64,000 nt of DNA, from positions 124,001 to 188,000 of the IMG/VR virus record IMGVR_UViG_3300043446_003193; one strand, given 5' to 3'. Shown here one piece after another: positions 11,530 to 25,358 of the stretch. The notes below the pieces were generated by a model. It was not told where the DNA came from. It ran no database searches and saw only the letters and a program-made list of their open reading frames with translations. The position numbers and the translations under genes were made by a program. The number at the start of each line of letters is the position of its first letter. Positions within the stretch are counted from its first letter, which is position 1.

Positions 11530-11877
11530 TTAGTTATTTGCGTTTTCAAGAACTGATAATACTACTTCTAATGATCCAGATTGTGTAGTTCTCATAATCA
11601 ATGCGTCATTTCTTTCTAAAATTACTTTACCAGGAAAAGGATTTAATGCTTCTCCAACTGGAATATGTGCGTTGTATATCAAAGATGATAATGCTAAAGA
11701 ACCACTCTTTTGAACTTGAACCGTTACAGTTTGTTCACTACCGGTAACATTCGTTACTGCAGCAGATAAAAGGATTGTAGCTAAGTCTTGGTCTTCCTGA
11801 TATATTGTGTTACTTCCACTTGCTAAAGTTTTAGTAATTACTCTGAATCTATTTAAAGGTAATTGACTAGTTGCCAT
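11530..11877 (-). CDS. Small virion structural protein
   Basis: 115 aa beta-rich (LNRFR...GKVILE...LSVLE); resembles small proteins that follow beta-helix structural genes in T4-like phages. Confidence 0.55.
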   Translation of the reverse strand: MATSQLPLNRFRVITKTLASGSNTIYQEDQDLATILLSAAVTNVTGSEQTVTVQVQKSGSLALSSLIYNAHIPVGEALNPFPGKVILERNDALIMRTTQSGSLEVVLSVLENANN

Positions 11878-11887
11878 AATTTATTTT

Positions 11888-14800
11888 TTAATTTTCTAAT
11901 GCTAAGTTTAATGGTGTAAATTGTGCCGATAATGCTTTTGTAAATGTTCTACCTTCAATTGTTCCGGTAGCTTGTCTAATTACAAAATCATTTCCTGCAT
12001 AAAAATCACCTGTTTCATCTCCTGATGTGTGGAATACTCTACCACCACTCACTTCGGAAATTCTAATATCATAATTTGTTTCTCCCACACCACCCTGATT
12101 TACAGGTAATGCTAAGAAGTTAACCCCTGCACCTGCATATGAAAAATCATGTGAAGTTGAAGTGATTAATGAACCAAACTCTTCTAAATATTCTTTTCCT
12201 GCTCCTTGAATAACAACTGTATCTATTGTGTTAATAATAACATCAAATAGTTGTCCAATTTTATTTTTTGCAGGAACACTTAAAGTTGTAAAATGTGAAT
12301 CTGGATCAGTTATAATATATTCTTTCATATATTGCCAAGCCAAAACAAAATCACCTGCTAAAGAGCCGGATGTATTTGATATTTGTGGTATCACCGTAAT
12401 TACTCCTTGTGTAAATGATGAAGTTGCTGCAACTGGTAAAGTATATAATCCAGTTCCAGAAATATCTTGTCCTTTAAATAATCCTTGTGTAAATTGTGAA
12501 GTTCTTGCTGCTTTTGGAACTAATAAATCAGCTGCAATAGCATCAACTACTAATCCACTATCTGTTATTGTAGAAGCATATCTACTACCACTTCCACTCA
12601 CATATGATGATGCATAACTACCTGATAAAGCTAGTTTGTTTATCATATATGTTTGTATATTACTCTTTTGTGCCGAAACTAAAAGAGAAGCATCGGTATC
12701 AATTGATGCACTTACTGCTGAAATATCAGGTTTAACTAACATTCTTAAACCTTCTGCTCTTAACCCATAATCACCAAATGTAGTATTTGAGTTTAATAAA
12801 GAAGCATGTCCTCCATCAATACAATATACACCAGTACTACTAAAGTTTGTAAAGAATGATACCAATTGTCCATATCCTCTACCTCTAATACAAATACCAA
12901 TACCATTAAATGCTACCTGTGTGTAAGCATCTACAATCATTGATTTAAGTGGTGAGTAAGGATGTAATACTGAATCATCTACAATCATTCCACCAGGTCC
13001 GTTTCCTACCAATGGATTATTATTTTCATAATCTAAAGGTACATAGAATTTATCAGCCGGCGTTGAAATTGCAGAACAGTTTTGAACATATGGAGAAGTT
13101 ACGATATAAGCGTTTGGTGCGAATGCAAAAAAGAATCCTTGTCTTGGGTCATCTAAATCATCAATTTCACAACCCTCTAATCTTAATCCCCAACAATATG
13201 TACCATTATTCATTAAGAATAAATTCTCACCTTTTGTTCCAGTTGTAGGTCTAACCACAACACTTCTCAAATCATCTCCCAATATAGAAACATTTGATGG
13301 AACTGTAATTGGTGCTTCCTCAACATAGTATCCACTTTTTACTTGAACACTTTGTCTATAAACAGGAAGACCAGGATTTGCTGCTAATGAAGCGGATGCA
13401 GCTGTTATTGCCGCTTTTATAGTTCTGAATGAAGTTGAAAGAGTTTTACCATCGTTTGTATCTAATCCATCTTCACTTACATACCAAACTTTTTCAGTTA
13501 CACCTATATCAGTTAATCCTGCACCAGAACCACTAAGAGCAGTTGCTATTAAAGTTCCACCAACTGTCAAACTATCTCTTAAACTAACTGAACCTGTAAT
13601 TAAAAGTGAACCGGATATTACAACTGAACCTGTAAATTCATGCTTATCGTCTCCGGTATTTCCAAATTTGTTTGAACCAGAAGTATATAGAACAGATGAA
13701 GAAACTAGGGTTACATGATATTCTTTTGCTGTAATAGTTCCAGTTACATCTAAATTACCACTTATTATTTGATTATCTCTAAATGTATTTGAACCCGTTA
13801 ATGCAATCTTATCAATGTTTGTGGTTTGTAATACATCTATTTGAACTGAACCTGAAACTAATGTAGGTTTTTGTCCAATGTTAGAATATAATACATTTGA
13901 TGCGGATGTTGCAGTTGATGCATTACCATACAAAGAACCACTAATTTGTGTAGCTTGTAAAATACTAGCGGATATTGTATTAGTTGAATATAATGAACCC
14001 GTTAATTGATAAGTTCCATTTAATGATTTTGAATTAACCCATTGTCCACCATTAAATACTAATGTATCTCCAGCGGAAATACCACTAATTGCTACATCTG
14101 ATAATCCTCCTAAAGTTACTGAAATTGGATTTGTTCCACTTGCACCAATTCCATTGATACTTCTAAATAATCCACCTTGTATAATTGCCGCAGTATTACT
14201 ATCTGCTAAATTGGTACAGTCTGCTCTTACTAAAAGATACGCTACAAATATTCCGTTTTGTGCCGTATTAGGTGCTTCAACAAATGATTCATTACTAATT
14301 GCGTTTTGTGCATTTAATAATGTAGTGTATTGGCCATTACCATAATAAACTATAAAAGCGTTTGTAGGTGAATTTGGTATCCAAAACACTCTTTGAATTG
14401 TCCATTGATAGTTATTTGGATTTGTACCATCTACGGTTGTTAATAAACCTGTTGTTTGATCAACATATTTTGTTGGGTCAATTACCGAATATCCCGAATT
14501 TCCTACTCCCGTATCAATTATAGAAGTTGAACCACTAAGATGATAACGATATATTTTTGAAGTATTTATTGCACTTTCAGAAATACTTGATGGGTGATTT
14601 GGATTATTAACATAGTTTGCACCTTGTTTATAAGAAACACCGGCTCCTTTTACAATACTTAATGTTGAACCACTTGGAGCCAATGTATGACCTGATATTT
14701 TTAAAGGTCCAAATGCTCTTGTAAAATCATCATTTTGTTGTTGTGCTCCGTATGCAATTTGTGGTGAATTATATACACCAGTTGATACACTTCCGCTTAA

Positions 14801-15562
14801 ATGAAGTACAACACCTAAACTTATTTCAGTATCCCATTGATTTATATCCGCACTACCCCAAGCATTAGTTTGTTGTACATCTTGTCCATATTCATCAATA
14901 CCAACATATGTTATTTTTGCCGAACCAGAATACTTTATCGGTAAATTGGTTTTTGCATCCCAACTTACTTTTTTAACTGTTGGAAATGGATCTTGAGTAA
15001 GGGATGCATTTAACTTAACAATAAGACCCTCACCTGCTGATATACTAAATGTAGTTGAACCAGGCGTAGAACTCAATACACCACCTTTAAGAACACCTGT
15101 GTAAAGATTACTTTCTAGCCATCTTAAACGAGTTACATTGGTATATCCTTCTCCGTTTTGTGAAAAGTATAAATCATTTGTTGAACCGGAAACATAAATA
15201 TAAGATGCTGAAATAGAAGTATCTATATTAGTAGATACTGGCATAAATTGAACATACCCCTTAATAGTTTCACTACCAGATACATTTAATGCTCCAGTTA
15301 AAGATGTTACACCAATTAAAGTATTTGAACCCGTTGTATATAATGATCCTGTAATTACTACATCTCCGATAGTATTTAATGACCCACTATTTTGTGTATT
15401 TGTTGTGAAAATCTCTTGAATAGTTTCACCATTGGAGCCAGATTTTTCAAAATAAATCTTACCATCGTAAGTATTTATCGCTAATTCTCCTAAATCTAAT
15501 TGAGCAGTAGTTGGACGGTTTCCAGCTACGGCACTCCTACGCAACTTAATTGTTTGGGCCAT
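11888..15562 (-). CDS. Fibre/spike with Mtd_N-like N-terminus and pectin-lyase-like beta-helix
   Basis: N-terminal IKLRRS...P...L.LGELAINTYDGKIYF; internal WYVS.DG.D.NDG...FRTIKAA...VKSGYYVE..PI.VP..VSI.GDDLR is a typical beta-helix cap. Confidence 0.7.
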   Translation of the reverse strand: MAQTIKLRRSAVAGNRPTTAQLDLGELAINTYDGKIYFEKSGSNGETIQEIFTTNTQNSGSLNTIGDVVITGSLYTTGSNTLIGVTSLTGALNVSGSETIKGYVQFMPVSTNIDTSISASYIYVSGSTNDLYFSQNGEGYTNVTRLRWLESNLYTGVLKGGVLSSTPGSTTFSISAGEGLIVKLNASLTQDPFPTVKKVSWDAKTNLPIKYSGSAKITYVGIDEYGQDVQQTNAWGSADINQWDTEISLGVVLHLSGSVSTGVYNSPQIAYGAQQQNDDFTRAFGPLKISGHTLAPSGSTLSIVKGAGVSYKQGANYVNNPNHPSSISESAINTSKIYRYHLSGSTSIIDTGVGNSGYSVIDPTKYVDQTTGLLTTVDGTNPNNYQWTIQRVFWIPNSPTNAFIVYYGNGQYTTLLNAQNAISNESFVEAPNTAQNGIFVAYLLVRADCTNLADSNTAAIIQGGLFRSINGIGASGTNPISVTLGGLSDVAISGISAGDTLVFNGGQWVNSKSLNGTYQLTGSLYSTNTISASILQATQISGSLYGNASTATSASNVLYSNIGQKPTLVSGSVQIDVLQTTNIDKIALTGSNTFRDNQIISGNLDVTGTITAKEYHVTLVSSSVLYTSGSNKFGNTGDDKHEFTGSVVISGSLLITGSVSLRDSLTVGGTLIATALSGSGAGLTDIGVTEKVWYVSEDGLDTNDGKTLSTSFRTIKAAITAASASLAANPGLPVYRQSVQVKSGYYVEEAPITVPSNVSILGDDLRSVVVRPTTGTKGENLFLMNNGTYCWGLRLEGCEIDDLDDPRQGFFFAFAPNAYIVTSPYVQNCSAISTPADKFYVPLDYENNNPLVGNGPGGMIVDDSVLHPYSPLKSMIVDAYTQVAFNGIGICIRGRGYGQLVSFFTNFSSTGVYCIDGGHASLLNSNTTFGDYGLRAEGLRMLVKPDISAVSASIDTDASLLVSAQKSNIQTYMINKLALSGSYASSYVSGSGSRYASTITDSGLVVDAIAADLLVPKAARTSQFTQGLFKGQDISGTGLYTLPVAATSSFTQGVITVIPQISNTSGSLAGDFVLAWQYMKEYIITDPDSHFTTLSVPAKNKIGQLFDVIINTIDTVVIQGAGKEYLEEFGSLITSTSHDFSYAGAGVNFLALPVNQGGVGETNYDIRISEVSGGRVFHTSGDETGDFYAGNDFVIRQATGTIEGRTFTKALSAQFTPLNLALEN

Positions 15563-15614
15563 ATCTATGGTTCTTATTACAGTATATACTAAAAAATGAC
15601 TTATATAAGTCTCT

Positions 15615-15623
15615 TATAAATAT
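15615..15623 (-). promoter_or_regulatory. Putative late promoter motif ATATTTATA
   Basis: Directly after a terminator, upstream of 15562. Confidence 0.65.
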
Positions 15624-15652
15624 AAAAGGATTGATGTTTCCACCAATCCTTT
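15624..15652 (-). terminator. Intrinsic terminator
   Basis: Minus strand AAAGGATTGGTG-GAAA-CATCAATCCTTTT: long stem, GAAA loop, U tract, downstream of 15680..17593. Confidence 0.75.
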
Positions 15653-15679
15653 CCAATTTAATTTTTTATGTTCGTTCTA

Positions 15680-17593
15680 TTAGAAATATCCACCATCAAT
15701 TTTAGATGAGAATTCTAATTTACCATCACTTTCTCTATATCCTAAAATACCAGTCAATACATTTGTAGTAGCTGTTGTAGAAACATATCCTAACTCATTT
15801 GAAGAGTTTCTGAATAATATTGCCGATGAGTTTGTATTTGCATCAGTTCCACCCGCATGCGCTAAAGTTACTTTACCTTTAATGTATGTTTGACCAGATG
15901 AACCGGTTACGATTAATGCGTCTGTGTAATAAGAGAATACTGTTCCGTTATCAATTAAATAAGAATCTCCAATTGCACTTGCTCCAGTTGCTTTTGGTAA
16001 AGTGTTTGGAGTTAAACTAATTTCAGAACCTTGAGTACCATAAGTAGTTGTAATTACTTTACCACTCTGTAAACTAGATGAAACTAATAAGAAATAATCA
16101 TTTGTTGAATCCCAAAGTAAAGATGAAGATATGTTATTAGAACCACTATCCATCATCTCAATACCTGCGTATCTTTGATAAGGTGCGTAAGCGTTTAATC
16201 TAATAATGTTATCATCAATTTCAAGAGTTGATGCGGATAATATGATTTGATTTGCCGAACCTAAAACAGTTAAGTTACCTGCAATAGTAGTTGAACCACT
16301 AACATATAAATTCTTACCGATACCAACACCACCACTTACGATTAATGCTCCATCGTTCCAAGTTGAGTTTTGAGTTGTATTAGAAATAGTTGTAATACCG
16401 GTTACTGATACATTACCTGCTGTTTCTAATTTAATCTTTTCAGAACCATTAGTTGTATCAATTGTAATGTACGGATTTGAAGCTTCTTTTAATACATAAG
16501 CGTTTGCAACATTATCTTCAATTACTTCATTGATTGATGTGATTGAATTACCAATAGTAACTAATTCTGAATTATCAGTTGTTGTGATTGCTACATAGTT
16601 ATTAGCTCCTTCAGCAATTGTTAATGCGTTTGATGTATTATCTTTTAATGCAATGTTAGTTGCTGCATTTGCTACATTAATTGTACCACCACTAACAAAA
16701 AGGTTATCGGTAATTCTAACATTACCTGCACTAACATTTATACCACCACTTACATTTAAAGAACCCGTTTGAGTTGTATTACCTAATTGAGATAATGAAC
16801 CTGTAAGAGCTACTGAAGATGAAATGAAAACTGATGCAGTTGCTGTTAATCTATCAGTTGAATCCGTACCAAATGTAGCAGAACCACTAACAGTAATATT
16901 GTTATAGATTTGAACATCGGATAAATTGATGTTTTGAATATTTGCAGTACCACTAACATGTAAGTTTCTCCAAGCTTGAGTACCACTACCTAAATCAAAT
17001 GCGTTATTAACATCTGGTAGGATTGATGAACTAACTTCACCACCAAAAATAATTTGGTCAGTATTAAAATCACCAATATTAATATTACCACCCAAAGTGA
17101 TATTACCTTTAATATTTGCGTTTCCTTGTAATTCTAAATTTGATGCAGAAATATCACCACTTGCAGAAATGTTTTGAGAAAGAGTTAAACTACCTGTTAA
17201 ATTTACAGAACCATTTAATTGATCAATTGTAAGTTTAGTAACACTTCTTCCTTCTAAGTTACCAGTTAAATCAATATTTGTATTTCCACCACCACCAACA
17301 TTACCTAATATATAAAGAGCTTGGTCATTAGTTGAATAAAATGGAGTACCATCTAATACAGAACCATAAGTTGCAGTTGCAATTGATGGTGCGTTTGTAC
17401 CGGTATAAATTTTTGATACCGCTACGTGCGCTCCAGCTACTCCCTCATCATTTACATTTGGGGAACCTATTAATACGAAAGGACCGTTTAAGTCATTAAT
17501 TGAGCCGGATGCGATAATTAATTCGGCGTTTCTAGCAGTAGTTGTTTTTACACTACCTATACTACCCCTACGATGTTTTATAATTTGAGCCAT
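15680..17593 (-). CDS. Fibre/adaptor protein (Mtd_N-like start, C-terminal IDGGYF)
   Basis: 637 aa; MAQIIKHRRG start, GALIVSGGVGIGKNLYVSG fibre repeat, ends KIDGGYF. Confidence 0.65.
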   Translation of the reverse strand: MAQIIKHRRGSIGSVKTTTARNAELIIASGSINDLNGPFVLIGSPNVNDEGVAGAHVAVSKIYTGTNAPSIATATYGSVLDGTPFYSTNDQALYILGNVGGGGNTNIDLTGNLEGRSVTKLTIDQLNGSVNLTGSLTLSQNISASGDISASNLELQGNANIKGNITLGGNINIGDFNTDQIIFGGEVSSSILPDVNNAFDLGSGTQAWRNLHVSGTANIQNINLSDVQIYNNITVSGSATFGTDSTDRLTATASVFISSSVALTGSLSQLGNTTQTGSLNVSGGINVSAGNVRITDNLFVSGGTINVANAATNIALKDNTSNALTIAEGANNYVAITTTDNSELVTIGNSITSINEVIEDNVANAYVLKEASNPYITIDTTNGSEKIKLETAGNVSVTGITTISNTTQNSTWNDGALIVSGGVGIGKNLYVSGSTTIAGNLTVLGSANQIILSASTLEIDDNIIRLNAYAPYQRYAGIEMMDSGSNNISSSLLWDSTNDYFLLVSSSLQSGKVITTTYGTQGSEISLTPNTLPKATGASAIGDSYLIDNGTVFSYYTDALIVTGSSGQTYIKGKVTLAHAGGTDANTNSSAILFRNSSNELGYVSTTATTNVLTGILGYRESDGKLEFSSKIDGGYF

Positions 17594-17626
17594 TTGCTTT
17601 ACTTTATTGTTATGGTTATTCTAATC

Positions 17627-17635
17627 TATAAATAT
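17627..17635 (-). promoter_or_regulatory. Putative late promoter motif ATATTTATA
   Basis: Intergenic, upstream of 17593. Confidence 0.65.
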
Positions 17636-17670
17636 GTTTTTTTCATATAAAAGTGATGATTTGGATTAAA

Positions 17671-18009
17671 TTAAAAAAATCCACCCAGATCTATAACACC
17701 TACATTCTGCATTGAACTATCTGCAACAGGTGAAGTAGTACCAACTGTTCCAACTCTTTGAATATAAACTGAAGCGGAAACTGCTGTTCTATTAATCGCA
17801 TCTAAACTTGCAGAAACTTGATTATCAACCACCGCCATTGCTCCACTTACAATTACTGAATACTCATCATCAGTTCTTGCCTTAAATGTTGATGATCCAG
17901 AAACTATTAATGCAGATCCGGTTGAATTTCCTACGATTACTACCGAACCTGTAATTGGAACATCAAAATTACTAAAATCTATTTGTTTAGGTTGAATTAA
18001 CTCTGCCAT
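17671..18009 (-). CDS. Small virion adaptor protein
   Basis: 112 aa, TGS/SGS-rich, ends VIDLGGFF. Confidence 0.55.
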   Translation of the reverse strand: MAELIQPKQIDFSNFDVPITGSVVIVGNSTGSALIVSGSSTFKARTDDEYSVIVSGAMAVVDNQVSASLDAINRTAVSASVYIQRVGTVGTTSPVADSSMQNVGVIDLGGFF

Positions 18010-18034
18010 TATCTACTTTGTGTATATTATTATC

Positions 18035-18043
18035 TATAAATAT
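18035..18043 (-). promoter_or_regulatory. Putative late promoter motif ATATTTATA
   Basis: Intergenic, upstream of 18009. Confidence 0.65.
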
Positions 18044-18049
18044 TATTAA

Positions 18050-19144
18050 TTATAGTTTCGTTATTGTTATATATCCTGAACCTGAATTATATCTACTTAA
18101 ATTTGTTATTGCACTTCCACTAAATGTAGATAATCCATCATAATTTCCATCAGATGTTGATATCGTAGTTGCAGTTGATATGATATAAGAACTACCACCC
18201 CCACCACCATCAGATGCAGGTTGAGAACTTCCCCAAGAACCGGCACCTCCGGCATATCCACCACCACCACCACCGGCAATAGGAGTTCCACCGCCACCAC
18301 CACCAAATCCACCTGCAGTTGCATTTGCGGGTGTATATGTTAATGCAGGTAATCCACCAACTGCACCACTTACAAATGCAAAACCTCCTGCACCATGTGA
18401 ACCCAGTTGTGTCATTGTAAATGTTCCGTCACCTCTCATACCATTTCCTAAAAATCCACCACCACCACCTCCATCGTAAAGATTTGAAGATACTACCGAT
18501 GCAGTATTTATATGAGAACGACCTCCTAAACTTCCTGTTCCACCGGGAGCGTTATGTCTTGATAATGAACCGGTTGTTGCGGTTGAACCATTACCTGCCA
18601 ACGAACCACTTTTTAGTATTCCACCAAATCCCATAACATCACCACTATATGCACCTTGCCCACCTGCACCACCTGCTACTAAATAAGGAGTATTTGAACC
18701 TGATAAAACAAAGAATGAACCTCCGCCTCCGCCTACACCAACATATGATAATCCAGATGTTGCTGTATTTAAACTTCTTTGACCAACAACCATTGTAAAC
18801 TTTTGTCCTTGTGTTAGAGGAACTCTGGCTTTAACAATTGCTCCCATAGAACCAGAATATATTCTTGGATATGAACTAATACCACTTGCTGCACCCGCTA
18901 CTTCAATTTCATAAGTTGCAGTTTCAGGTACTGTCCATATTTGATAACCTTGAAATGAACCAGTTGTAAAAAATAAAGGATTTAAAAAATAACTACCAGA
19001 TGTAGAACCCGTATATGCTGCTAATATCGCAGTACCCAAAGGACCGGTTGAACCACTAATTCCTACTGTTGTAAAAGTAAACGATGTAAATGGATATAAT
19101 GCTAAAGAACCTATTGTAAATCCATTTGAAAATTGTATTGCCAT
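18050..19144 (-). CDS. Glycine-rich domain protein (ALK/LTK-type Gly_rich), probable fibre tip
   Basis: GYQIWTVP...YEIEVAGA...VVGQ...GGGGGSF...LVAGGAGG...GGFGGGGG...GGGGGGY.GG pattern. Confidence 0.7.
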   Translation of the reverse strand: MAIQFSNGFTIGSLALYPFTSFTFTTVGISGSTGPLGTAILAAYTGSTSGSYFLNPLFFTTGSFQGYQIWTVPETATYEIEVAGAASGISSYPRIYSGSMGAIVKARVPLTQGQKFTMVVGQRSLNTATSGLSYVGVGGGGGSFFVLSGSNTPYLVAGGAGGQGAYSGDVMGFGGILKSGSLAGNGSTATTGSLSRHNAPGGTGSLGGRSHINTASVVSSNLYDGGGGGGFLGNGMRGDGTFTMTQLGSHGAGGFAFVSGAVGGLPALTYTPANATAGGFGGGGGGTPIAGGGGGGYAGGAGSWGSSQPASDGGGGGSSYIISTATTISTSDGNYDGLSTFSGSAITNLSRYNSGSGYITITKL

Positions 19145-19156
19145 AATTTATACTAT

Positions 19157-21649
19157 TTAGAATAATCTCGCAACACCTTTAATATTAAATGTTCCCGTTT
19201 CAGTTACTTTAATTTGTATATTTCCACCAGATTGTCCAATTGACATTGCAGGTGATGGTCCACCTGCGCCCGATGTTTGTTTACCATTTTGTGATATACC
19301 TGCGTTTACTCCATAAGATGCAAATTGATAGTTTGCAGAAGTTGCAGTTGAGTTTGTAGTATTTACCATCAAAATATCAAATGTTCCACCATTGTAAGAT
19401 GCAGTTGGATAACTCACCAATACATATGCTGTTGGGTTTGTTACTGCTGTATAACTAAATGCGGTTGATGTAGAACCCAATGAAGATTGTAATGTTGCAA
19501 TACTTGCTGATATATTTTGGTCAGATGTGGTAGTACTCGCCGATAATGCATAAAGTGAAGCACTTACCGTATTAAATGATGAACCAGTCCAACTATTAAA
19601 TGATGCGGTTGAAAGTAATGATGAAGTTTGAAATTGTGATGATACACCATTACTATTTCCTACCCAAGCATACCCACTTTGTAAACTTGCGGTAAATGAA
19701 CCACTTATATTAACTGCTCCTGTAATTTCAGCTATTCCATTGTTTTGAATATATAAACTACTACCACTTGTTAATGATAAAACAGAACCAGATGGTATTG
19801 ATAAAGATGAACTTATTAGTGCTACGGAACTTACAGTTAAAGAACCTGTAATAATTTGATTACCATTAAATGCGTTTGAACCGGTAGTTGCAAATGAAGA
19901 TGTTAATTGAGAACTTCCACTAATTACACCAGTAGGTAATAATGAAATAATTTGTGAACTACCACTAACAATACCTCTACCCGTTGTTTCATAACTTCCA
20001 CTTACAAACCCAAAAGAAGATATTTGTGCAGAACTACTAATTGTTCCGGCAGGCGTTCCTGCTACGGTTAAGTTTACTATTCTCGTATTAAATGAAGAAC
20101 TATCTGTTGTATATGATGATGTAAATGTATTAAATGATGAAGTTGTTGTATATCCCCAATTAGTTGTTTGCAACGATGAAGATATAATTCCTCTACCAAT
20201 TATTTCATAACTTCCACTTACAAAGCCAAATGAAGATATTTGTGTAGAACTACTAATTGTTCCAACAGGTATTGTTGAAGAACTAATAAATCCTAATGAG
20301 GTTATTTGTGCAGAAGAACTAATTGTTCCTGCAGGAGAGCTTCCACTTAAATCATATCTTGCATCAAGTGAAGATGTAAGTTGCGAAGAACCACTAATTG
20401 TTCCAGATGGTAATTGTGCTGAACTACTTATTATTCCTCTACCAATTATTTCATAACTTCCACTAACAAATCCAAATGATGTAATTTGTGTAGAAGAACT
20501 TATTAAATTAGATGGTAATGGTTGAACACTACCACTTAATGTATATCTTAAATCATATGAAGATGTTAATTGTGAAGAACTACTAATTGCTCCACTTAAA
20601 CTTGTCAAATATGAACCACTAACAAATCCCAAAGATGTAATTTGTGTAGATGAAGATATAATATTTCTACCAATTGTTTCATATGAACCCGTATTTGATT
20701 CTAATGAGTTTAATCTATCTACTAAACTTGCTGTTGAAAAACTTGCTGTAAAATTATTAAGTGATGATAAATCTACAAATGATTGTGTGGATACTTGAAC
20801 TCCGTTTATTGTTAATCCACCTACTATTTGAACACTACCACTTAAAATTTGAGTATCATTTAATTGGTCTCCAAATTGATTACTACCACTTGCATAAATT
20901 ACAGAAGATGTTTCATATAAAGTATGTAAATTAGTTACAGTTAAATTATCAATAGTTGTTCCATTTAATTGAGTACTACTACTGATTATTCCTCTACCTG
21001 TTGCTTCAAACTCAGTAATTTGTGCAGATGAACTATAAACTCCACTTCCACCCAATACTTGCGAACTTGCACTTACCACTCCCGTTGGTAATAAACTTAT
21101 GATAGAACCACTTAAAATACCTCTACCAGTAGTTTCGTAAGAACCACTCACAAAACCAAATGATGTTATTTGTGATGAACCACTAATTAATGCAGGTTTA
21201 TTTACAATTGTATCAAAATTAGTTGAACCGGTTATACCTGCCGCGGCGGATATTGGTGCTAATATATCAATTGTTGTACCACTAATACCATCAATTCTTC
21301 TTAAATATGCTCTATCATTTGCAGTTAATTGATTTGCAACAAATGATGTACCTGTTTGAGTATCTGTAAATGTGTTTGATCCAGTTATTGCAAATCCTAA
21401 ATCATTTATTTGTTGAGATGATGATATTGTCCCATTTGGTATATTTGTAGATGCTGTAAATGATGCGGTATAATTTTCTAATGAAGTTAATCTTTGATCA
21501 TCTAATGTATTTATACTATCTTTTACTGCATTACTAACAACACTTAATCCCAATTTATAGGTCGTACCTCTATCAATACCCACTATTTGAGTTTCAAGTG
21601 ATGCACTTGTGAGTGGTATTAGTTGCGATATTCTTTTTCCTTGACTCAT
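19157..21649 (-). CDS. Ser-rich repetitive fibre/decoration protein
   Basis: 830 aa; KRISQL N-terminal module and many GTISSSxQI / GFVSGSYE..GRGII repeats. Confidence 0.7.
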   Translation of the reverse strand: MSQGKRISQLIPLTSASLETQIVGIDRGTTYKLGLSVVSNAVKDSINTLDDQRLTSLENYTASFTASTNIPNGTISSSQQINDLGFAITGSNTFTDTQTGTSFVANQLTANDRAYLRRIDGISGTTIDILAPISAAAGITGSTNFDTIVNKPALISGSSQITSFGFVSGSYETTGRGILSGSIISLLPTGVVSASSQVLGGSGVYSSSAQITEFEATGRGIISSSTQLNGTTIDNLTVTNLHTLYETSSVIYASGSNQFGDQLNDTQILSGSVQIVGGLTINGVQVSTQSFVDLSSLNNFTASFSTASLVDRLNSLESNTGSYETIGRNIISSSTQITSLGFVSGSYLTSLSGAISSSSQLTSSYDLRYTLSGSVQPLPSNLISSSTQITSFGFVSGSYEIIGRGIISSSAQLPSGTISGSSQLTSSLDARYDLSGSSPAGTISSSAQITSLGFISSSTIPVGTISSSTQISSFGFVSGSYEIIGRGIISSSLQTTNWGYTTTSSFNTFTSSYTTDSSSFNTRIVNLTVAGTPAGTISSSAQISSFGFVSGSYETTGRGIVSGSSQIISLLPTGVISGSSQLTSSFATTGSNAFNGNQIITGSLTVSSVALISSSLSIPSGSVLSLTSGSSLYIQNNGIAEITGAVNISGSFTASLQSGYAWVGNSNGVSSQFQTSSLLSTASFNSWTGSSFNTVSASLYALSASTTTSDQNISASIATLQSSLGSTSTAFSYTAVTNPTAYVLVSYPTASYNGGTFDILMVNTTNSTATSANYQFASYGVNAGISQNGKQTSGAGGPSPAMSIGQSGGNIQIKVTETGTFNIKGVARLF
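19900..21200 (-). repeat. Coding Ser-rich repeats in the 830-aa gene
   Basis: Multiple SSSxQI(T/S)S(F/L)GFVSGSYE..GRGI units. Confidence 0.8.
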
Positions 21650-21650
21650 T

Positions 21651-22280
21651 TTATAATATTATTTCTTCATCATTTTCGGTTAATATATTGATATTATCTT
21701 CCGTATCTAATATAAATTGTACAAATTTACCTTTTACATAAATATTTGTCTTATTTTTATTAGTTTCATCAATTCCAATAAATTCATTAATTATTAAATG
21801 AACTCCTGTTTCGGATTGTTCAAAACTAAGATAAGTTGGTGTTCTAACTCCATTAACATATACATCAAAATTTGCTTCATATAATTCAGTAACCGCCTGT
21901 ATATAAACATTATTAAAAGTTAATCTAATCCTTCTGTCATCTAAAATATCAATATAATCTGGTTGACGAAATATCCAGTTTGCTGTAATATCTAATATTT
22001 CATCTCTAAATCCTAAAACTAAATCCTTTTCACTTCTTTTAATAGTAGTCGGAATTAACGCTTGACGAGTTTTAGAATTAAATGTTTTTCTGCTTCTACT
22101 ATCAAATGATGTTTCATAATCATAAGTTTGAACCGATGCCAAACTTCCAGAAAATGTTTCCCCTTGAATTTTTAAATCATTTGCAAGTTTGTCAATAAAA
22201 GATGCACCTGGTATTTTATTAATATCAGTTTTAGGTACTACCTTATCTAATTTTCTTGTATTTGAATTAAATATTTTCAT
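21651..22280 (-). CDS. Neck-associated structural protein
   Basis: FDVYVNG beta domain as in the two upstream genes; acidic C-terminal ILDTEDNINILTENDEEIIL. Confidence 0.5.
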   Translation of the reverse strand: MKIFNSNTRKLDKVVPKTDINKIPGASFIDKLANDLKIQGETFSGSLASVQTYDYETSFDSRSRKTFNSKTRQALIPTTIKRSEKDLVLGFRDEILDITANWIFRQPDYIDILDDRRIRLTFNNVYIQAVTELYEANFDVYVNGVRTPTYLSFEQSETGVHLIINEFIGIDETNKNKTNIYVKGKFVQFILDTEDNINILTENDEEIIL

Positions 22281-22603
22281 TACCCTCTATATTCTACGTC
22301 TGCAGAAAGATATACTTTATCTCTTTCGTTTAGAACGTATGGAAAATTTGATTTTTTAAATTTTATATTAACACCATCTGAACTTTCTTCAATAAGATAA
22401 TCTACTGGATTGATTATTACGGTATTTATGTAAACTAAAATTCTATTTTCGTTTTTTTGTCTTTTTATTTCTCTTAAATAGAGTTTAAAAAACCAAAATT
22501 TTGCAACAAAAGTATAATAAGTTTCATCAACACTTTTAAATGTACAAAGTGCTTGATTATCGGTATTGTAGGTATTAACCATATCCAAAAAACTATTCTT
22601 CAT
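22280..22603 (-). CDS. Neck-associated hypothetical protein
   Basis: 107 aa, ILVYIN motif paralogous to the C-terminal domain of 22603..23703; coupled start/stop. Confidence 0.5.
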   Translation of the reverse strand: MKNSFLDMVNTYNTDNQALCTFKSVDETYYTFVAKFWFFKLYLREIKRQKNENRILVYINTVIINPVDYLIEESSDGVNIKFKKSNFPYVLNERDKVYLSADVEYRG

Positions 22604-23703
22604 TATAAATCAATAAATTTACCTATTATTGCAACTTCATAACCAGTAGTTTCTACATTATATCCTAAAACTCCACTATCAAATGTTATTGTTAAATTAT
22701 TTCCTGTTATTAATTTTGAATACGCGCCAACTTCCTCATATACTCTAATACCATTTATATAAACTTTCAAATTATCGTTATTACCAACGGTTGATGAAAG
22801 GATTGACGGTACTGGTATAAATTTAATATCAGAAGTTATAAAAATATTTTGTGCACTTGCTGTTAATATTTTTGAATTATTAAGATTTAACCAATCAATT
22901 ATATCTTTATTATCATAATATGGTGATGGTTTTGTTAGCACTCCTTCTAATCTTCCGTTTCCTGTTACATCCGTTTCGGTAGTAATAACTACTTTCTTTG
23001 TAGACATTGATTTTTTAATAGTTGATTGTTCATCAAACTTTTCAGGAAGTAAATATGCTTTTACATTAAGATTGAATTCTACTCTATTGATTCTTTCAGT
23101 ACCTTCACCAACTTCATTTACAACATTGAACTCAGATACTTCTGTTCTAAATTTAAAACGGTCTTTATCTCCCCAATATTGTCCAGTATAGTTTAATTGT
23201 TCAATTACCTGATTTAATTGTTCAGTAAAGTTTGTCCAACCCATACATTCATAATTCACTTCCACATATTCTGGCATTTGAATTTTATAAATTTCGTATT
23301 TAGGTTTTGAAGTTGTACCTAATAATGTAAAACGGTCGTATCTATTATCTTTTGAATATTTTGTTACTCCTTGATATGAAACGTGTCTTTTTAACATCGG
23401 CATTGCTTCATCTTTTGCAATTGACGTTCTTCTAATCATCAATAATGGTAATTGTATTTTACCATGTATGTCTCTAAAAACACCTTGTCTTCTTGCACCA
23501 TTCCATCTTTCCGAATTACCATATATTACAGGTATTTTTAACGCTTTACCATTATCATCTAATGTTGGTAAAACAGTATCTTCTAAATAAGACATCATTG
23601 CATAATCAATATCAAAGAGAGATACACTTTGTTTAAAGTCTCCTTTGTTTGATTTTAGTTGATTTCCCCTATTTAATGTTTCTTTTAATGGATTTGTAGA
23701 CAT
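22603..23703 (-). CDS. Tail terminator / sheath-stabiliser-like protein (T4 gp15-like)
   Basis: KIPVIYG..ERW...LPLLMI...PEYVEVNYE pattern; third gene after the capsid gene. Confidence 0.55.
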   Translation of the reverse strand: MSTNPLKETLNRGNQLKSNKGDFKQSVSLFDIDYAMMSYLEDTVLPTLDDNGKALKIPVIYGNSERWNGARRQGVFRDIHGKIQLPLLMIRRTSIAKDEAMPMLKRHVSYQGVTKYSKDNRYDRFTLLGTTSKPKYEIYKIQMPEYVEVNYECMGWTNFTEQLNQVIEQLNYTGQYWGDKDRFKFRTEVSEFNVVNEVGEGTERINRVEFNLNVKAYLLPEKFDEQSTIKKSMSTKKVVITTETDVTGNGRLEGVLTKPSPYYDNKDIIDWLNLNNSKILTASAQNIFITSDIKFIPVPSILSSTVGNNDNLKVYINGIRVYEEVGAYSKLITGNNLTITFDSGVLGYNVETTGYEVAIIGKFIDL

Positions 23704-23704
23704 T

Positions 23705-24160
23705 TTAGTTTATTCTTTCTTCTATGTTAAGATTTGATTTAGATACCATAAATGTTTGACAAACAACACTAAAATTATTACCAGGTTGTCCACCTACTAA
23801 TTGTACTTCGGTTGTATTATCAATCTCATAGTATGCTGTATTGAAATAAATGATATCACCTATTTCTGGATATATTCCTTTTTCTTCTAACATCCATCTA
23901 TCCAATTTGAATGTTACATTTTGATCAGTTTCGGCTCCAAATCCTTCGTATCTAGCAGTTTCTGGATCTTTGTTAATTAAAGCAAATACTTCTACACCAG
24001 GATGCCAGGTTTTGTTTATAGATTCTCCATAAATGTTTACCTTTGTTTCATTTAAATTAATTTTAAATAAAACAACTTTATTTTGAACTACATCGTCTAC
24101 TACTTCTCTAGCAAGACTTTTAAATAATTCTATATCTCTACCTACTAAAAATTTTGGCAT
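23705..24160 (-). CDS. Neck/head-closure protein (T4 gp14-like)
   Basis: NIYGES...PEIGDIIYF...YYEI motifs; synteny. Confidence 0.6.
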   Translation of the reverse strand: MPKFLVGRDIELFKSLAREVVDDVVQNKVVLFKINLNETKVNIYGESINKTWHPGVEVFALINKDPETARYEGFGAETDQNVTFKLDRWMLEEKGIYPEIGDIIYFNTAYYEIDNTTEVQLVGGQPGNNFSVVCQTFMVSKSNLNIEERIN

Positions 24161-24161
24161 A

Positions 24162-25358
24162 TTATCCTACATATAATTTTAAAGGAACTTTTCTTAACAT
24201 TTCTTGGTGGTGATTTGATTCATGCGCTTGTTTTTCAAACACATTCTTTCTACTCATCTCTTCTAAATTTTCTCTTAATTGCGTTACTAATAAATCTTTT
24301 TCCACTTGTGCTTCTGCTCTTAACGCTGCACCATCCAATGCAATTTCTCCATCTGGAATAGGAACAGAGGAATATTTTTCTCTAATAGCTCCTAATAATT
24401 CTTTAGATAATGCAAGAGTATATTTTCTAATCCATTGTTTACCCACATCATTAATATTTGAATACTGAATAAAATCATATGGAATATCAGAATAATCAGA
24501 AAGTGAATCGGCTTGAATTGTTTGAGAATCATGTTCAAATTCATCTCTACTCATATATTCAAAATAAACTCTATTCATTCCTGTTCCAGTTGGTACTGGA
24601 AATATTTCTAATTTATTATCTACAATATTAAATGTATGTGCAGATTTTCTTATGTGATCATTAAATTCAATTTGTTGCATTCTTAGAACATCTTCATATA
24701 AAGGCATCATTAAGAATTGTGCTGCAGGTGAGTAGTTACCAAATCCTAATTCTGAAATTAAGTTTAGAGTACCTTGTGCACCAACTGAATATGGGTCAAA
24801 GAAACGAGTGATAGCAGGAATTGCTTCGTGATATACTCTGGTTACATCTATTGTTGAACTTCCTGAAAACAATGTTTGAAAAGATGAAGAAGTTTCAACA
24901 TCTATTGCCTGTTTCATAATATCATATATCTGAACTGATGCGGTTAAATCAACATATGCTTTCTTTATTGCGGTAGAACCACCCACACCCGCTTGAGTTC
25001 CGTATTGTTGTGCCATACGAATCGCAGTAGGAAGAAATGAACCATCAACAAGTGTTTGAGAAAAATTTGAAACTTTTCCCTTTGGTTGGCCTCTTAAAAT
25101 ATCAAGATTATTACGAAGGTTAAATTGATTTACTTGAGAAGAATATTCTGAAGTTGCTTCTTCAAAACAAGCCCAAATTTGTTCATTTTCCAATTCAATA
25201 TTTACAATTGGATAACCTAATCTTTTTGCTACCCAAGTTGCAGTTTTTGGTGCATCTAATCTAAATTCGCTATCGGAATCGTATAATCCAAAAGGAGTTG
25301 ATGAACCTGATATAAATGAGCCAGATATTGAACCAGACCAATAAGTGTTTGCAGACAT
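24162..25358 (-). CDS. Neck/adaptor protein (T4 gp13-like)
   Basis: RLGYPIVNIEL...WIRKYTLALSKELLG.IR.KY...LDG..L..EA..E motifs. Confidence 0.75.
   Translation of the reverse strand: MSANTYWSGSISGSFISGSSTPFGLYDSDSEFRLDAPKTATWVAKRLGYPIVNIELENEQIWACFEEATSEYSSQVNQFNLRNNLDILRGQPKGKVSNFSQTLVDGSFLPTAIRMAQQYGTQAGVGGSTAIKKAYVDLTASVQIYDIMKQAIDVETSSSFQTLFSGSSTIDVTRVYHEAIPAITRFFDPYSVGAQGTLNLISELGFGNYSPAAQFLMMPLYEDVLRMQQIEFNDHIRKSAHTFNIVDNKLEIFPVPTGTGMNRVYFEYMSRDEFEHDSQTIQADSLSDYSDIPYDFIQYSNINDVGKQWIRKYTLALSKELLGAIREKYSSVPIPDGEIALDGAALRAEAQVEKDLLVTQLRENLEEMSRKNVFEKQAHESNHHQEMLRKVPLKLYVG

What the first reader, a model, noticed from the sequence alone, without database searches (positions are those of the whole stretch)
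11530..22280. Gene order mirrors a possible peptide-socket daisy chain for branched fibres
Seen, in transcription order: the 209-aa gene ends with acidic ILDTEDNINILTENDE and the next gene starts with a KRISQL module. The 112-aa gene ends IDLGGFF and the next starts with an Mtd_N-like IKHRRG domain. That protein ends IDGGYF and the next again starts IKLRRS (Mtd_N-like). Inference: each C-terminal peptide docks the N-terminal domain of the following product, building a multi-tier appendage, probably neck-attached since the series follows the gp13/14/15-like genes.
Basis: inference. Interest (0 to 1): 0.6.

Follow-up and report, generated by a model that had tools for sequence, protein, structure and literature searches.

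The report
Serial tail-fibre joints, T4 gp36–gp37 style
An uncultured 209-kb T4-like phage appears to build a long fibre from separate proteins, each docking its short C-terminal tail onto the N-terminal domain of the next, which is the joint phage T4 uses once (gp36 to gp37) and this phage uses at least twice.

Summary

**Joints 112→637 and 637→1224**
- The 112-aa protein ends IDLGGFF and the 637-aa protein ends IDGGYF.
- Each is followed by a gene that starts MAQ.IK.RR(G/S).
- These are the only such motifs in the 209-kb genome.
- The order holds in every related metagenomic locus where the downstream gene is visible.
- A blind IMG/VR scan for I-D-G-G-T-F-stop gave 123 hits, all at ORF ends. 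About 70% are followed by this N-domain, against 5% of other ORFs.
- The same pair occurs at T4 gp36→gp37, where binding is established, and at BPP-1 Bbp9→Mtd.
- The 1224-aa N-domain is homologous to the T4 gp37 N-terminus (hhalign probability 96.9%).
- A 3+3 complex model places residues 104-112 of the 112-aa protein on residues 2-26 of the 637-aa protein. Its ipSAE is 0.65, against 0.00 for the best control.

**Joint 209→830**
- The acidic 21-aa tail of the 209-aa protein occurs if and only if a KRIS(Q/E)L fibre gene follows: 47 of 47 loci with the tail, 0 of 26 without.

**Not supported**
- "Branched" and "neck-attached" are not shown.
- Pfam's Mtd_N model does not hit the window's proteins. 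Only profile-profile and weak fold evidence link them.

**Verdict:** a new, iterated variant of a known kind of joint. Binding is inferred, not measured.

The parts
22603..23703 (-). 366-aa gp15-like protein (tail sheath stabiliser/terminator). Context only: it follows the gp13-like (24162-25358) and gp14-like (23705-24160) genes.
   Evidence: Atlas neighbours include a cluster carrying PF16724 T4-gp15_tss, score 0.97. hhalign to T4 gp15 is weak: 24% identity over 160 columns, probability 3%. gp13 is supported by PF26809 on homologues and gp14 by phrog_679.
22280..22603 (-). 107-aa conserved protein of unknown role, present in every relative between the gp15-like and 209-like genes.
   Evidence: Synteny. 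No Pfam or PHROG hit.
21651..22280 (-). 209-aa adaptor candidate: low-confidence N-terminal half, a beta-sandwich at about residues 100-190, and a C-terminal acidic tail.
   Evidence: AF2 mean pLDDT 63. The sandwich scores 76-87 and the tail (192-209) below 50. No significant PDB match. 76 homologues.
21654..21716 (-). 21-aa acidic tail (residues 189-209, ...LDTEDNINILTENDEEIIL). Proposed docking peptide for the 830-aa fibre.
   Evidence: It is a clean presence/absence element on several backbones, including a subfamily only 28-38% identical in the body. Loci with the tail always carry a KRIS(Q/E)L gene 1-4 nt downstream: 6/6 and 41/41. None of 26 loci without the tail does.
19157..21649 (-). 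830-aa fibre. Its N-terminal KRISQL module (about 40 residues, nt 21530-21649) is conserved; the rest is variable.
   Evidence: Homologous genes are 304-1428 aa long, share the N-terminus and have divergent bodies and C-termini.
18050..19144 (-). 364-aa glycine-rich protein with an ALK/LTK TNF-like plus glycine-rich domain. It is a variable third gene of the 830 cassette and a possible tip adhesin.
   Evidence: Pfam PF12810, E 3.4e-8. PDB LTK 7nx0, E 3.7e-5. Relatives replace it with a 255-aa weak fibrinogen_C-like gene, a 151-aa gene, or nothing.
17671..18009 (-). 112-aa chain starter. It has no RRG N-domain. Its tail, residues 104-112 (GVIDLGGFF, nt 17674-17700), is the proposed plug.
   Evidence: 120 homologues at 45-93% identity, with D107 and G109 invariant. 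In the complex model, residues 104-112 form the whole confident interface.
17594..17670 (-). 77-nt spacer before the 637-aa gene. It holds CATCA..CTTTTATAT, as does the next spacer.
   Evidence: The 9-mer is not enriched in the window (4 matches against 3.1 expected).
15680..17593 (-). 637-aa middle segment. It has an N-terminal Mtd_N-like domain (residues 1 to about 110, nt 17264-17593) as socket, a variable shaft, and a conserved C-terminal tail (...GILGYRESDGKLEFSSKIDGGYF, nt 15683-15757).
   Evidence: Both ends are conserved, while the middle varies from 637 to 809 aa or is split into 1307+535 aa. hhalign to Mtd_N-positive sequences gives probability 84.5%. AF2 pLDDT 78; VIA Z 4.3, rmsd 2.5 A over 44 residues against Mtd residues 5-48. 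Interface residues are 2-11, 14-15, 18, 21-23 and 26.
15563..15679 (-). 117-nt spacer before the 1224-aa gene.
11888..15562 (-). 1224-aa distal segment. Its N-terminal gp37-N-like domain covers residues 1-66 (nt 15365-15562). It has no DGGxF tail, and its C-terminus matches tail-fibre PHROGs.
   Evidence: hhalign against T4 gp37 residues 1-100: probability 96.9%, E 1.3e-10. tblastn hits annotated gp37 proteins. 446 relatives in IMG/VR. phrog_17885 and others.
11530..11877 (-). 115-aa protein always encoded after the 1224-like gene. It may be a further partner or an assembly factor.
   Evidence: Synteny. The same pair occurs in Prochlorococcus phage P-SSM2, genes 293 and 294. phrog_1276.

Best explanation
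The region encodes a multi-segment fibre assembled end to end by repeated use of one kind of joint.

**The joint.** A short C-terminal tail has the form hydrophobic-Asp-(Leu/Gly)-Gly-x-aromatic followed by the free carboxyl end. It is carried by a trimeric upstream protein. It lies against the first beta-strand, with its basic K/R-R-G/S patch, and the adjacent elements of the small trimeric N-terminal domain of the protein encoded next. That domain belongs to the Mtd_N / T4 gp37-N superfamily.

**The main chain.** The 112-aa protein, which has a tail only, plugs into the 637-aa protein, which has both socket and tail. The 637-aa protein plugs into the 1224-aa protein, which has a socket only. 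This gives a polar, serial chain 112→637→1224 and is the T4 gp36→gp37 joint used twice.

**The second device.** The 209-aa protein carries an optional 21-aa acidic tail that recruits the 830-aa KRISQL fibre, plus a variable third protein, as an add-on cassette.

**Status of each step.**
- Shown: the motifs, their adjacency, their conservation, their polarity, homology of the 1224-aa N-domain to gp37-N, and the perfect co-occurrence of the acidic tail with the KRISQL gene.
- Modelled: the 112/637 interface.
- Inferred: physical binding at all three joints, the trimeric 3:3 stoichiometry, and where the chain is anchored on the virion.
For: 1. Window and genome: the two tails and the two N-motifs are unique in the genome and adjacent.

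2. Same phage family:
- In every one of about 28 loci where the downstream gene is visible, the 112-like gene is followed by the MAQIIKHRRG gene.
- In every one of at least 15 loci, the IDGG.F end is followed by MAQTIKLRRS. This holds even where the 637 equivalent is split in two.
- The shafts vary widely while the ends stay conserved.

3. Other lineages show chains of 3-5 genes with cognate junction types, starters without an N-domain and enders without a tail.

4. Reverse test:
- The DNA pattern for IDGGTF-stop gave 123 IMG/VR matches, all at the ends of ORFs.
- 79 of the 114 downstream ORFs carry the N-domain, against 54 of 1097 other ORFs (odds ratio 44, p 1e-59).
- There are about 20 distinct N-domain clusters, and ten junctions have a TAATG overlap.
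- 8 of 10 tested downstream N-termini hit Pfam Mtd_N above the cut-off.

5. Cultured phages with the same pair:
- T4 gp36 ...DFGYY → gp37 ...IQFKRSK..GELAINL.
- Salmonella phage STP4-a, Synechococcus phage S-CBS2 (three tiers) and Ralstonia phage PY059YO380.
- BPP-1 Bbp9 ...DLGGIA → Mtd.
- PMC3004832 states that trimeric gp36 binds the N-terminal region of gp37.

6. Homology: 1224-type N-domain against gp37-N, probability 96.9%, and against the Mtd_N-positive set, 94.6%. 637 N-domain against the Mtd_N-positive set, 84.5%.

7. Complex prediction:
- The model supports binding; it does not show it.
- ipSAE 0.65, best of 3 controls 0.00.
- The pass mark was reached by 58 of 80 solved complexes and 2 of 110 mismatched pairs.
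- The runs agree in at least 60% of their contacts, and the partner's pLDDT is at least 38.
- The interface is tail residues 104-112 against residues 2-26 of the 637-aa protein.

8. Joint 209→830: tail and KRISxL gene co-occur in 6/6 plus 41/41 loci and in 0/26 loci without the tail. The tail is far better conserved than the protein body and is predicted to be disordered.
Against: - No binding has been measured.
- The complex job used my own alignments and a 3+3 set-up unlike its calibration. The 112-aa protein's own fold was uncertain (pLDDT 39-45).
- Only one of the three joints could be modelled.
- The counts are not corrected for phylogeny. The upstream IDGGTF proteins fall into 31 similarity clusters, one of which holds 77 members. 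Among the small clusters, 16 are never followed by the N-domain.
- In the forward direction, outside this phage family, only 21 of 66 N-domain genes are preceded by a tail. In 38 the upstream gene ends in an S74-type coiled coil. The socket therefore does not always have an adjacent plug.
- The 112-aa family shows no similarity to T4 gp36 beyond the tail.
- Pfam Mtd_N does not hit the window's proteins, and the fold match is weak.
- The gp36-gp37 interface is not solved at atomic level, so even the precedent does not prove that the tail is the contact.
Confidence: 0.65

Rival explanations
1. Tandem paralogues or fold caps. The N-terminal motif and the C-terminal motif are simply the conserved start and end of one fibre fold. 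Arrays of duplicated fibre genes then place an end next to a start without any contact between neighbouring products, and each fibre attaches independently to the virion through its N-domain.
For: Several middle proteins carry both motifs (637-aa; S-CBS2 gp051; L062 and L087). All these genes sit in fibre gene arrays. Synteny by descent explains much of the within-family conservation. Many N-domain genes have no tail-bearing upstream gene.
Against: - Polarity: chain starters (112, 84 and 70 aa; T4 gp36; Bbp9) have the tail but no N-domain. Chain enders have the N-domain but no tail.
- The type of tail matches the type of the following N-domain across lineages.
- The tail-bearing proteins are otherwise unrelated, from 49 to 3410 aa.
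- T4 gp36 is known to bind the gp37 N-terminal region.
- The complex model passed its controls.
Confidence: 0.15
2. The tail is a signal for something else, such as an assembly chaperone, a protease or a third structural protein. On this view the downstream N-domain protein is adjacent for reasons of co-expression only.
For: In at least eight IDGGTF loci the downstream gene is instead a roughly 70-aa coiled-coil protein, so the tail can be associated with other partners. Phage fibres often need chaperones encoded directly downstream, as with T4 gp38.
Against: The downstream proteins are long fibres with a structural N-domain, not chaperones. Ten junctions have a TAATG overlap, which fits equimolar partners. 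The complex model places the tail on the N-domain, with zero-scoring controls.
Confidence: 0.1
3. For the 209→830 joint only: cassette hitch-hiking. The 21 codons of the acidic tail belong to a mobile fibre cassette whose recombination boundary lies inside the 3' end of the 209-like gene. Tail and fibre then co-occur without touching.
For: Co-occurrence is the only evidence for this joint. The tail and the KRISxL gene are separated by only 1-4 nt. All cases lie within one phage family.
Against: - The tail is much better conserved than the body across subfamilies that are 28-38% identical, which indicates selection on the peptide.
- It is predicted to be flexible and exposed.
- The fibre's N-terminal 40 residues are conserved while the rest varies from 304 to 1428 aa, the usual sign of an attachment module.
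Confidence: 0.25

Closest known systems
Phage T4 long tail fibre distal half: gp36 → gp37 joint (genes 34-35-36-37 in assembly order)
   Same: - Gene order equals assembly order.
- gp36 ends ...QDFGYY, and gp37 starts with the homologous N-domain..IQFKRSK..GELAINL.
- Trimeric gp36 binds the N-terminal region of gp37 (PMC3004832).
- The 1224-aa N-domain also hits annotated gp37 proteins directly.
   Different: - Here the joint is used at least twice in series, because the middle protein carries both socket and tail.
- The 112-aa starter is not a gp36 homologue (no PF03903 hit).
- No gp35-like knee-cap or gp34-like proximal rod was identified.
- The genes follow the neck genes, not the T4 position.
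Bordetella phage BPP-1 Bbp9 tail fibre → Mtd (type member of Pfam Mtd_N, PF18454)
   Same: - Bbp9 ends ...GLADLGGIA directly upstream of mtd, which starts ..VQFRGGT.
- Sequences that hit Mtd_N follow IDGGTF tails in many phages.
- Profile-profile similarity to both window N-domains.
- Mtd residues 5-48 superpose on the 637 model: Z 4.3, rmsd 2.5 A, 44 residues.
   Different: - The window's proteins do not reach the Pfam Mtd_N threshold.
- Mtd is a terminal receptor-binding protein diversified by a retroelement.
- No such cassette was noticed among the genes examined here. It was not specifically searched for.
Branched tailspike/fibre assemblies such as CBA120 TSP1-4 (recalled from general knowledge; the related G7C and K1-5 systems likewise)
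   Same: Several receptor-binding proteins are hung on one another through N-terminal adaptor modules. Variable distal parts sit on conserved attachment modules.
   Different: In those systems the N-terminal domains of one spike bind the N-terminal region of another, giving side branches. Here the evidence is for C-terminus-to-N-terminus serial joints. The only link found is a weak fold row to CBA120 TSP2 (Z 3.4).
Flavobacterium phage vB_FspM_immuto and Microcystis phage Mel-JY01 (nearest cultured relatives by major capsid protein, 53-55% identity)
   Same: Distant T4-like head and neck genes.
   Different: In the immuto genome, none of the ORF termini checked downstream of the capsid gene shows the tail or N-domain motifs. 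Mel-JY01 was not examined for them.

Membership tests
T4 gp36/gp37-type fibre joint | The downstream protein starts with a domain homologous to the N-terminal region of T4 gp37. | tested here: met
   1224-aa protein: hhalign probability 96.9%, E 1.3e-10, 37% identity over 62 columns, plus tblastn hits to annotated gp37 proteins. The 637-aa protein is linked only indirectly: probability 80.6% to the 1224-type profile.
T4 gp36/gp37-type fibre joint | The gene directly upstream ends in a short Asp-x-Gly-aromatic tail at the free C-terminus. | tested here: met
   ...IDLGGFF and ...IDGGYF in the window. ...DFGYY in T4 and ...DFGYYS in STP4-a.
T4 gp36/gp37-type fibre joint | The upstream partner is a gp36 homologue (Pfam PF03903). 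| tested here: not met
   No Pfam hit for the 112-aa or 637-aa protein. hhalign of the 112 family against T4 gp36 gives probability 0.1%.
T4 gp36/gp37-type fibre joint | The upstream trimer physically binds the N-terminal region of the downstream trimer. | not testable with these tools
   Prediction only: ipSAE 0.65 against 0.00 for the best of 3 controls. The pass mark was reached by 58 of 80 solved and 2 of 110 mismatched pairs. The runs agree in at least 60% of contacts, and the partner's pLDDT is at least 38.
T4 gp36/gp37-type fibre joint | A gp35 knee-cap and a gp34 proximal rod link the chain to baseplate protein gp9. | not tested
   No search for gp34, gp35 or gp9 homologues in the genome was run. 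None appeared in the Pfam or PHROG scans of the neighbouring genes.
Pfam Mtd_N (PF18454) | HMM score above the gathering cut-off (26.3 bits). | tested here: not met
   No hit, even at E up to 10, for the N-terminal fragments of the 637-aa and 1224-aa proteins. 8 of 10 analogous N-termini from other phages do hit.
Pfam Mtd_N (PF18454) | Profile-level homology to sequences that are Mtd_N members. | tested here: met
   1224-type profile against the Mtd_N-positive set: probability 94.6%, E 6.9e-8. 637-type profile: probability 84.5%, E 6.9e-6.
Pfam Mtd_N (PF18454) | The same fold as Mtd residues 1-48 in the crystal structure. | tested here: inconclusive
   Foldseek found nothing at E of 0.001 or better. 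VIA-align gave Z 4.3, rmsd 2.5 A, 44 residues and 18% identity, with model residues 5-60 on Mtd residues 5-48. The collagen XVIII trimerisation domain scored similarly, at Z 4.7.
Neck fibres (T4 fibritin-like whiskers) | Attachment to the gp13/gp14/gp15 neck. | not testable with these tools
   The only evidence is gene position after the gp13-, gp14- and gp15-like genes. The 209-aa model has no significant structural match.

The most novel reading that the evidence does not exclude
The tail and socket form a portable, general-purpose fibre connector used across myo-, sipho- and podovirus-like phages.
- The plug is the hydrophobic-Asp-(Leu/Gly)-Gly-x-aromatic C-terminal tail.
- The socket is the Mtd_N / gp37-N trimeric domain.
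- T4 gp36→gp37, BPP-1 Bbp9→Mtd and hundreds of uncultured phages would all use it.
- It can be iterated two to four times, with cognate subtypes, to concatenate or swap fibre segments.
- In this phage family a second, unrelated plug, the acidic TENDEEIIL tail, adds an optional extra fibre to the same adaptor region and gives a truly branched appendage.

I found no paper that describes this motif pair.
Probability: 0.4. Interest if true: 0.75.

Novelty: new variant of a known kind. Interest (0 to 1): 0.6.

Why it matters
- If the tail-and-socket joint is real, it gives a sequence rule for reading fibre architecture straight from gene order in uncultured phages: which proteins are stacked, in what order, and which one is distal and so likely to bind the receptor.
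- It would explain how fibre segments can be exchanged between phages without breaking assembly, because the ends are conserved and the middles are free to vary.
- It would point to the still unsolved atomic contact between T4 gp36 and gp37 and between BPP-1 Bbp9 and Mtd.
- It would offer a defined handle for host-range engineering of laboratory phages by swapping distal segments at the joint.

Tried and rejected
**No result**
- Pfam and PHROG scans of the termini gave no hit for the window's N-domains or for the 112, 209 and 830-aa proteins.
- PDB sequence searches with the 1224-aa N-terminus, the 637-aa protein and the N-domain profile found nothing relevant.
- tblastn of the whole 637-aa protein against cultured phages found no match.
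- A single-sequence search for the 830-aa N-module in IMG/VR found nothing. The tail-pattern scan replaced it.
- Foldseek on the 637 N-domain model and on the 209-aa model found nothing significant.
- The atlas search found nothing for the 209-aa protein.
- Paper searches for the motif, for Mtd_N and for Bbp9 found nothing relevant.

**Rejected**
- A recent duplication of the junction DNA does not explain the two similar junctions.
- The shared 9-mer in the two spacers is not an enriched promoter motif: 4 matches against 3.1 expected.
- The nearest cultured relative, Flavobacterium phage immuto, was checked for the chain. None of the ORF termini examined shows the motifs.

I corrected the pattern and re-sent it to the same tool.
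- One alignment had a wrong coordinate and was rebuilt.

**Not used**
- Read laying, the look-up of sequencing runs and the search of protein representatives.
- Any genetic code other than table 11.


Full report
**Setting**

The window is bases 124,001-188,000 of a single 209,443-bp contig. GC is about 32%, and every gene in the region lies on the minus strand.

It is a distant T4-like myovirus:
- Major capsid protein: Pfam Gp23, E 1e-77, at 25458-27083.
- gp13-like adaptor at 24162-25358: phrog_211 here, PF26809 on homologues.
- gp14-like protein at 23705-24160: phrog_679.
- A 366-aa protein at 22603-23703 whose atlas neighbours include a T4-gp15_tss cluster. Direct hhalign to T4 gp15 is weak.

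The nearest cultured relatives by capsid protein are Microcystis phage Mel-JY01 (55%) and Flavobacterium phage vB_FspM_immuto (53%). Downstream of the region studied, the genome carries about a dozen more fibre-like genes before the tail sheath gene.

**Observation**

In transcription order the ORFs are 366, 107, 209, 830, 364, 112, 637, 1224, 115 and 1109 aa.
- The 209-aa protein continues five residues past the string quoted, ending ...TENDEEIIL.
- In the whole genome only the 112-aa and 637-aa ORFs end in D(L)GG(F/Y)F, and only the 637-aa and 1224-aa ORFs start with I-K-x-R-R-(G/S).
- The two junctions share only short motifs, so they are not a recent duplication.

**Conservation within the phage family**

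The 112-aa protein has 120 metagenomic homologues at 45-93% identity. The end G-V-I-D-L-G-G-F-F is almost invariant.

In about 28 loci where the next gene is visible:
- That gene always starts MAQIIKHRRG.
- Its product ends IDGG(Y/F/G/V)F and is always followed by MAQTIKLRRS.
- The shaft between the conserved ends varies: 637, 666, 684, 707, 721 or 809 aa.
- In two lineages it is split into 1307 + 535 aa. The tail stays on the second piece, next to the MAQTIKLRRS gene (L001, L024).

Conserved ends with free middles are what attachment interfaces look like.

**Other lineages, forward test**

The first 70 residues of the 1224-aa protein have 446 relatives in IMG/VR. I examined the best 80 loci.
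- Outside this family, 15 upstream genes end strictly in D-(G/A)-G-x-(F/Y) and 6 in looser variants.
- 38 end in an S74-type coiled coil, and 7 end otherwise.
- Several lineages show chains of three to five genes with matched junction types:

| Upstream end | Next protein's start |
|---|---|
| DLGGFF / DLGTF | IIKHRRG..GE.IVASGS |
| IDGGxF | IKLRRS..GELAINTYDGK |
| DLDFNI | IFKLRRGSGSVSL.DGELY |
| RYKGDP...FS | KS.RLL.SRRYTHD |

- Chain starters (112, 84 and 70 aa) have a tail but no N-domain. Chain enders have an N-domain but no tail.

**Reverse test**

I scanned IMG/VR for DNA encoding I-D-G-G-T-F followed by TAA. This variant does not occur in the window's own family.
All lie at the end of an ORF of 49 aa or more.
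- Of 114 with a visible downstream ORF, 79 start with a basic patch plus a GE(L/P)A turn. By eye about four more do.
- Among other ORFs of 100 aa or more in the same loci, 54 of 1097 do (odds ratio 44, Fisher p 1e-59).
- The downstream N-termini form about 20 clusters at 60% identity.
- The upstream proteins range from 49 to 3410 aa, but 77 of them fall into one loose similarity cluster. Among the small clusters, 16 are never followed by the domain. The p-value therefore overstates independence.
- Gaps run from -1 to 167 nt, and ten junctions have a TAATG overlap.
- Eight of ten tested downstream N-termini hit Pfam Mtd_N above the cut-off.

**Link to known systems**

- T4 gp36 ends ...VQDFGYY, and gp37 starts MATLKQIQFKRSKIAGTRP...GELAINLKD.
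- The 1224-type N-domain profile aligns to gp37 residues 5-66 with probability 96.9%, E 1.3e-10. The domain also hits annotated gp37 proteins by tblastn.
- Leiman et al. 2010 state that trimeric gp36 binds the N-terminal region of gp37, and that gp35 then binds gp36 (PMC3004832).
- The atomic interface is not available. No PDB chain matches the domain, and a 2026 preprint models this part only at low resolution.
- The same pair is present in Salmonella phage STP4-a, in the siphovirus S-CBS2 as a three-tier chain (gp050 → gp051 → gp052), and in Ralstonia phage PY059YO380.
- It is also present in BPP-1, where the Bbp9 fibre ends ...GLADLGGIA directly before Mtd.
- Both window N-domains resemble Mtd_N-positive sequences at profile level: probability 94.6% and 84.5%.
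- Pfam's own Mtd_N model does not hit them.
- An AF2 model of 637 residues 1-140 (pLDDT 78) superposes on Mtd residues 5-48 only weakly: Z 4.3, rmsd 2.5 A, 44 residues.
- The 112-aa family is not a gp36 homologue.

**Complex prediction**

The job used three copies of 637 residues 1-140 with three copies of the 112-aa protein, each with my own alignments.
- Verdict: the model supports binding; it does not show it.
- ipSAE 0.65, best of 3 controls 0.00.
- The pass mark was reached by 58 of 80 solved complexes and 2 of 110 mismatched pairs.
- The runs agree in at least 60% of their contacts.
- The partner's pLDDT is at least 38, so its own fold is uncertain. The other chains score 89.
- The confident interface is residues 104-112 of the 112-aa protein against residues 2-11, 14-15, 18, 21-23 and 26 of the 637-aa protein.
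- The register is 4/106, 6/108, 8/109-110 and 10/111, and each tail touches two copies of the N-domain.
The calibration holds only roughly for this set-up.

**The 209→830 joint**

The 209-like family has 76 homologues. They come with or without a 21-aa tail (...L.TED.....TEND(E/N)II(L/I)) on several backbones, including a subfamily only 28-38% identical in the body.
- The tail is predicted to be disordered, behind a beta-sandwich.
- All six context look-ups of tail-bearing members show a K(R/K)IS(Q/E)L fibre gene 1-3 nt downstream.
- None of 26 loci without the tail has one.
- A blind pattern scan for the tail found 43 further tails. All 41 with a visible downstream ORF are followed by that module, and 13 unrelated pattern hits are not.
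- The fibres share about 40 N-terminal residues and then vary from 304 to 1428 aa.
- All cases lie within one phage family, and no complex could be modelled. This joint rests on co-variation alone.

**What is not supported**

- Nothing shows branching. The 112→637→1224 chain is serial. A branch would exist only if the 209-like protein anchors both the 830 fibre and the 112 starter, which is speculation.
- Neck attachment rests on gene position only. In T4 the homologous joint belongs to the baseplate-attached long fibre.

**Conclusion**

It is an iterated variant of the T4 gp36→gp37 joint, not a new principle. The broader rule, a tail-and-socket connector shared by T4, BPP-1 and many uncultured phages, appears to be undescribed in the papers I could search. 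It deserves an experimental test.

Noticed in passing
window 18050-19144 (-): A 364-aa glycine-rich protein resembles the TNF-like plus glycine-rich domain of the animal receptor kinases LTK and ALK (Pfam PF12810, E 3.4e-8; PDB 7nx0, E 3.7e-5). Relatives have in its place a 255-aa weak fibrinogen_C-like protein, a 151-aa protein, or nothing. All versions start MAI.F..G.TIG. It may be a swappable tip adhesin of the 830-aa fibre.
   Followed up: partly
window 11530-15562 (-); L237 (Prochlorococcus phage P-SSM2 genes 293 and 294): The 1224-aa fibre ends ...FTPLNLALEN and is always followed by a 115-aa protein (phrog_1276). P-SSM2 has the same pair: its fibre ends ...TPLILALGGE and is followed by a 113-aa protein. 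This may be yet another conserved joint, or a fibre with its assembly factor.
   Followed up: partly
L001 10382-15938; L024; L057; L077; L070: A fourth recurrent junction type: the upstream protein ends ...RYKGDP.PV......FS and the next starts M..KS.RLL.SRRYTHD. In L001 and L024 it splits the equivalent of the 637-aa protein into two genes.
   Followed up: no
L111, L119, L152, L168, L172, L188, L226, L228: In at least eight unrelated IMG/VR contigs, a protein ending ...W..xIDGGTF is followed not by an Mtd_N-like fibre but by a roughly 70-aa predicted coiled-coil protein. This is a second recurrent partner of the same tail.
   Followed up: no
genome -24409..21649 in window coordinates (window 1-21649 and about 24 kb beyond its left end): About fourteen fibre-like genes of 530-1224 aa stand in a row between the neck genes and the tail sheath gene. 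Several start M.IDS.IITGS, and two end in the S74 chaperone domain. Glycosyltransferase-sized genes are interspersed. This is an unusually large fibre arsenal for one phage.
   Followed up: partly
window 15620-15628 and 17645-17653 (-): Both spacers before the RRG-type genes contain CATCA..CTTTTATAT at a similar distance from the start codon. The 9-mer is not enriched in the window (4 matches against 3.1 expected), so a promoter role is unproven.
   Followed up: yes
L001 2917-3093; L231 1879-2055; L232 2099-2287: Relatives of this phage encode a ribosomal protein S21 homologue (PF01165) just upstream of the scaffold and capsid genes.
   Followed up: no
window 22280-23703 and 21651-22280 (-): The C-terminal part of the gp15-like protein, the 107-aa protein and the 209-aa protein end in similar-looking stretches (..VY.NG......Y....I.F......V.I.GKF..). 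This may be a shared small beta-sandwich domain. It was seen by eye only.
   Followed up: no
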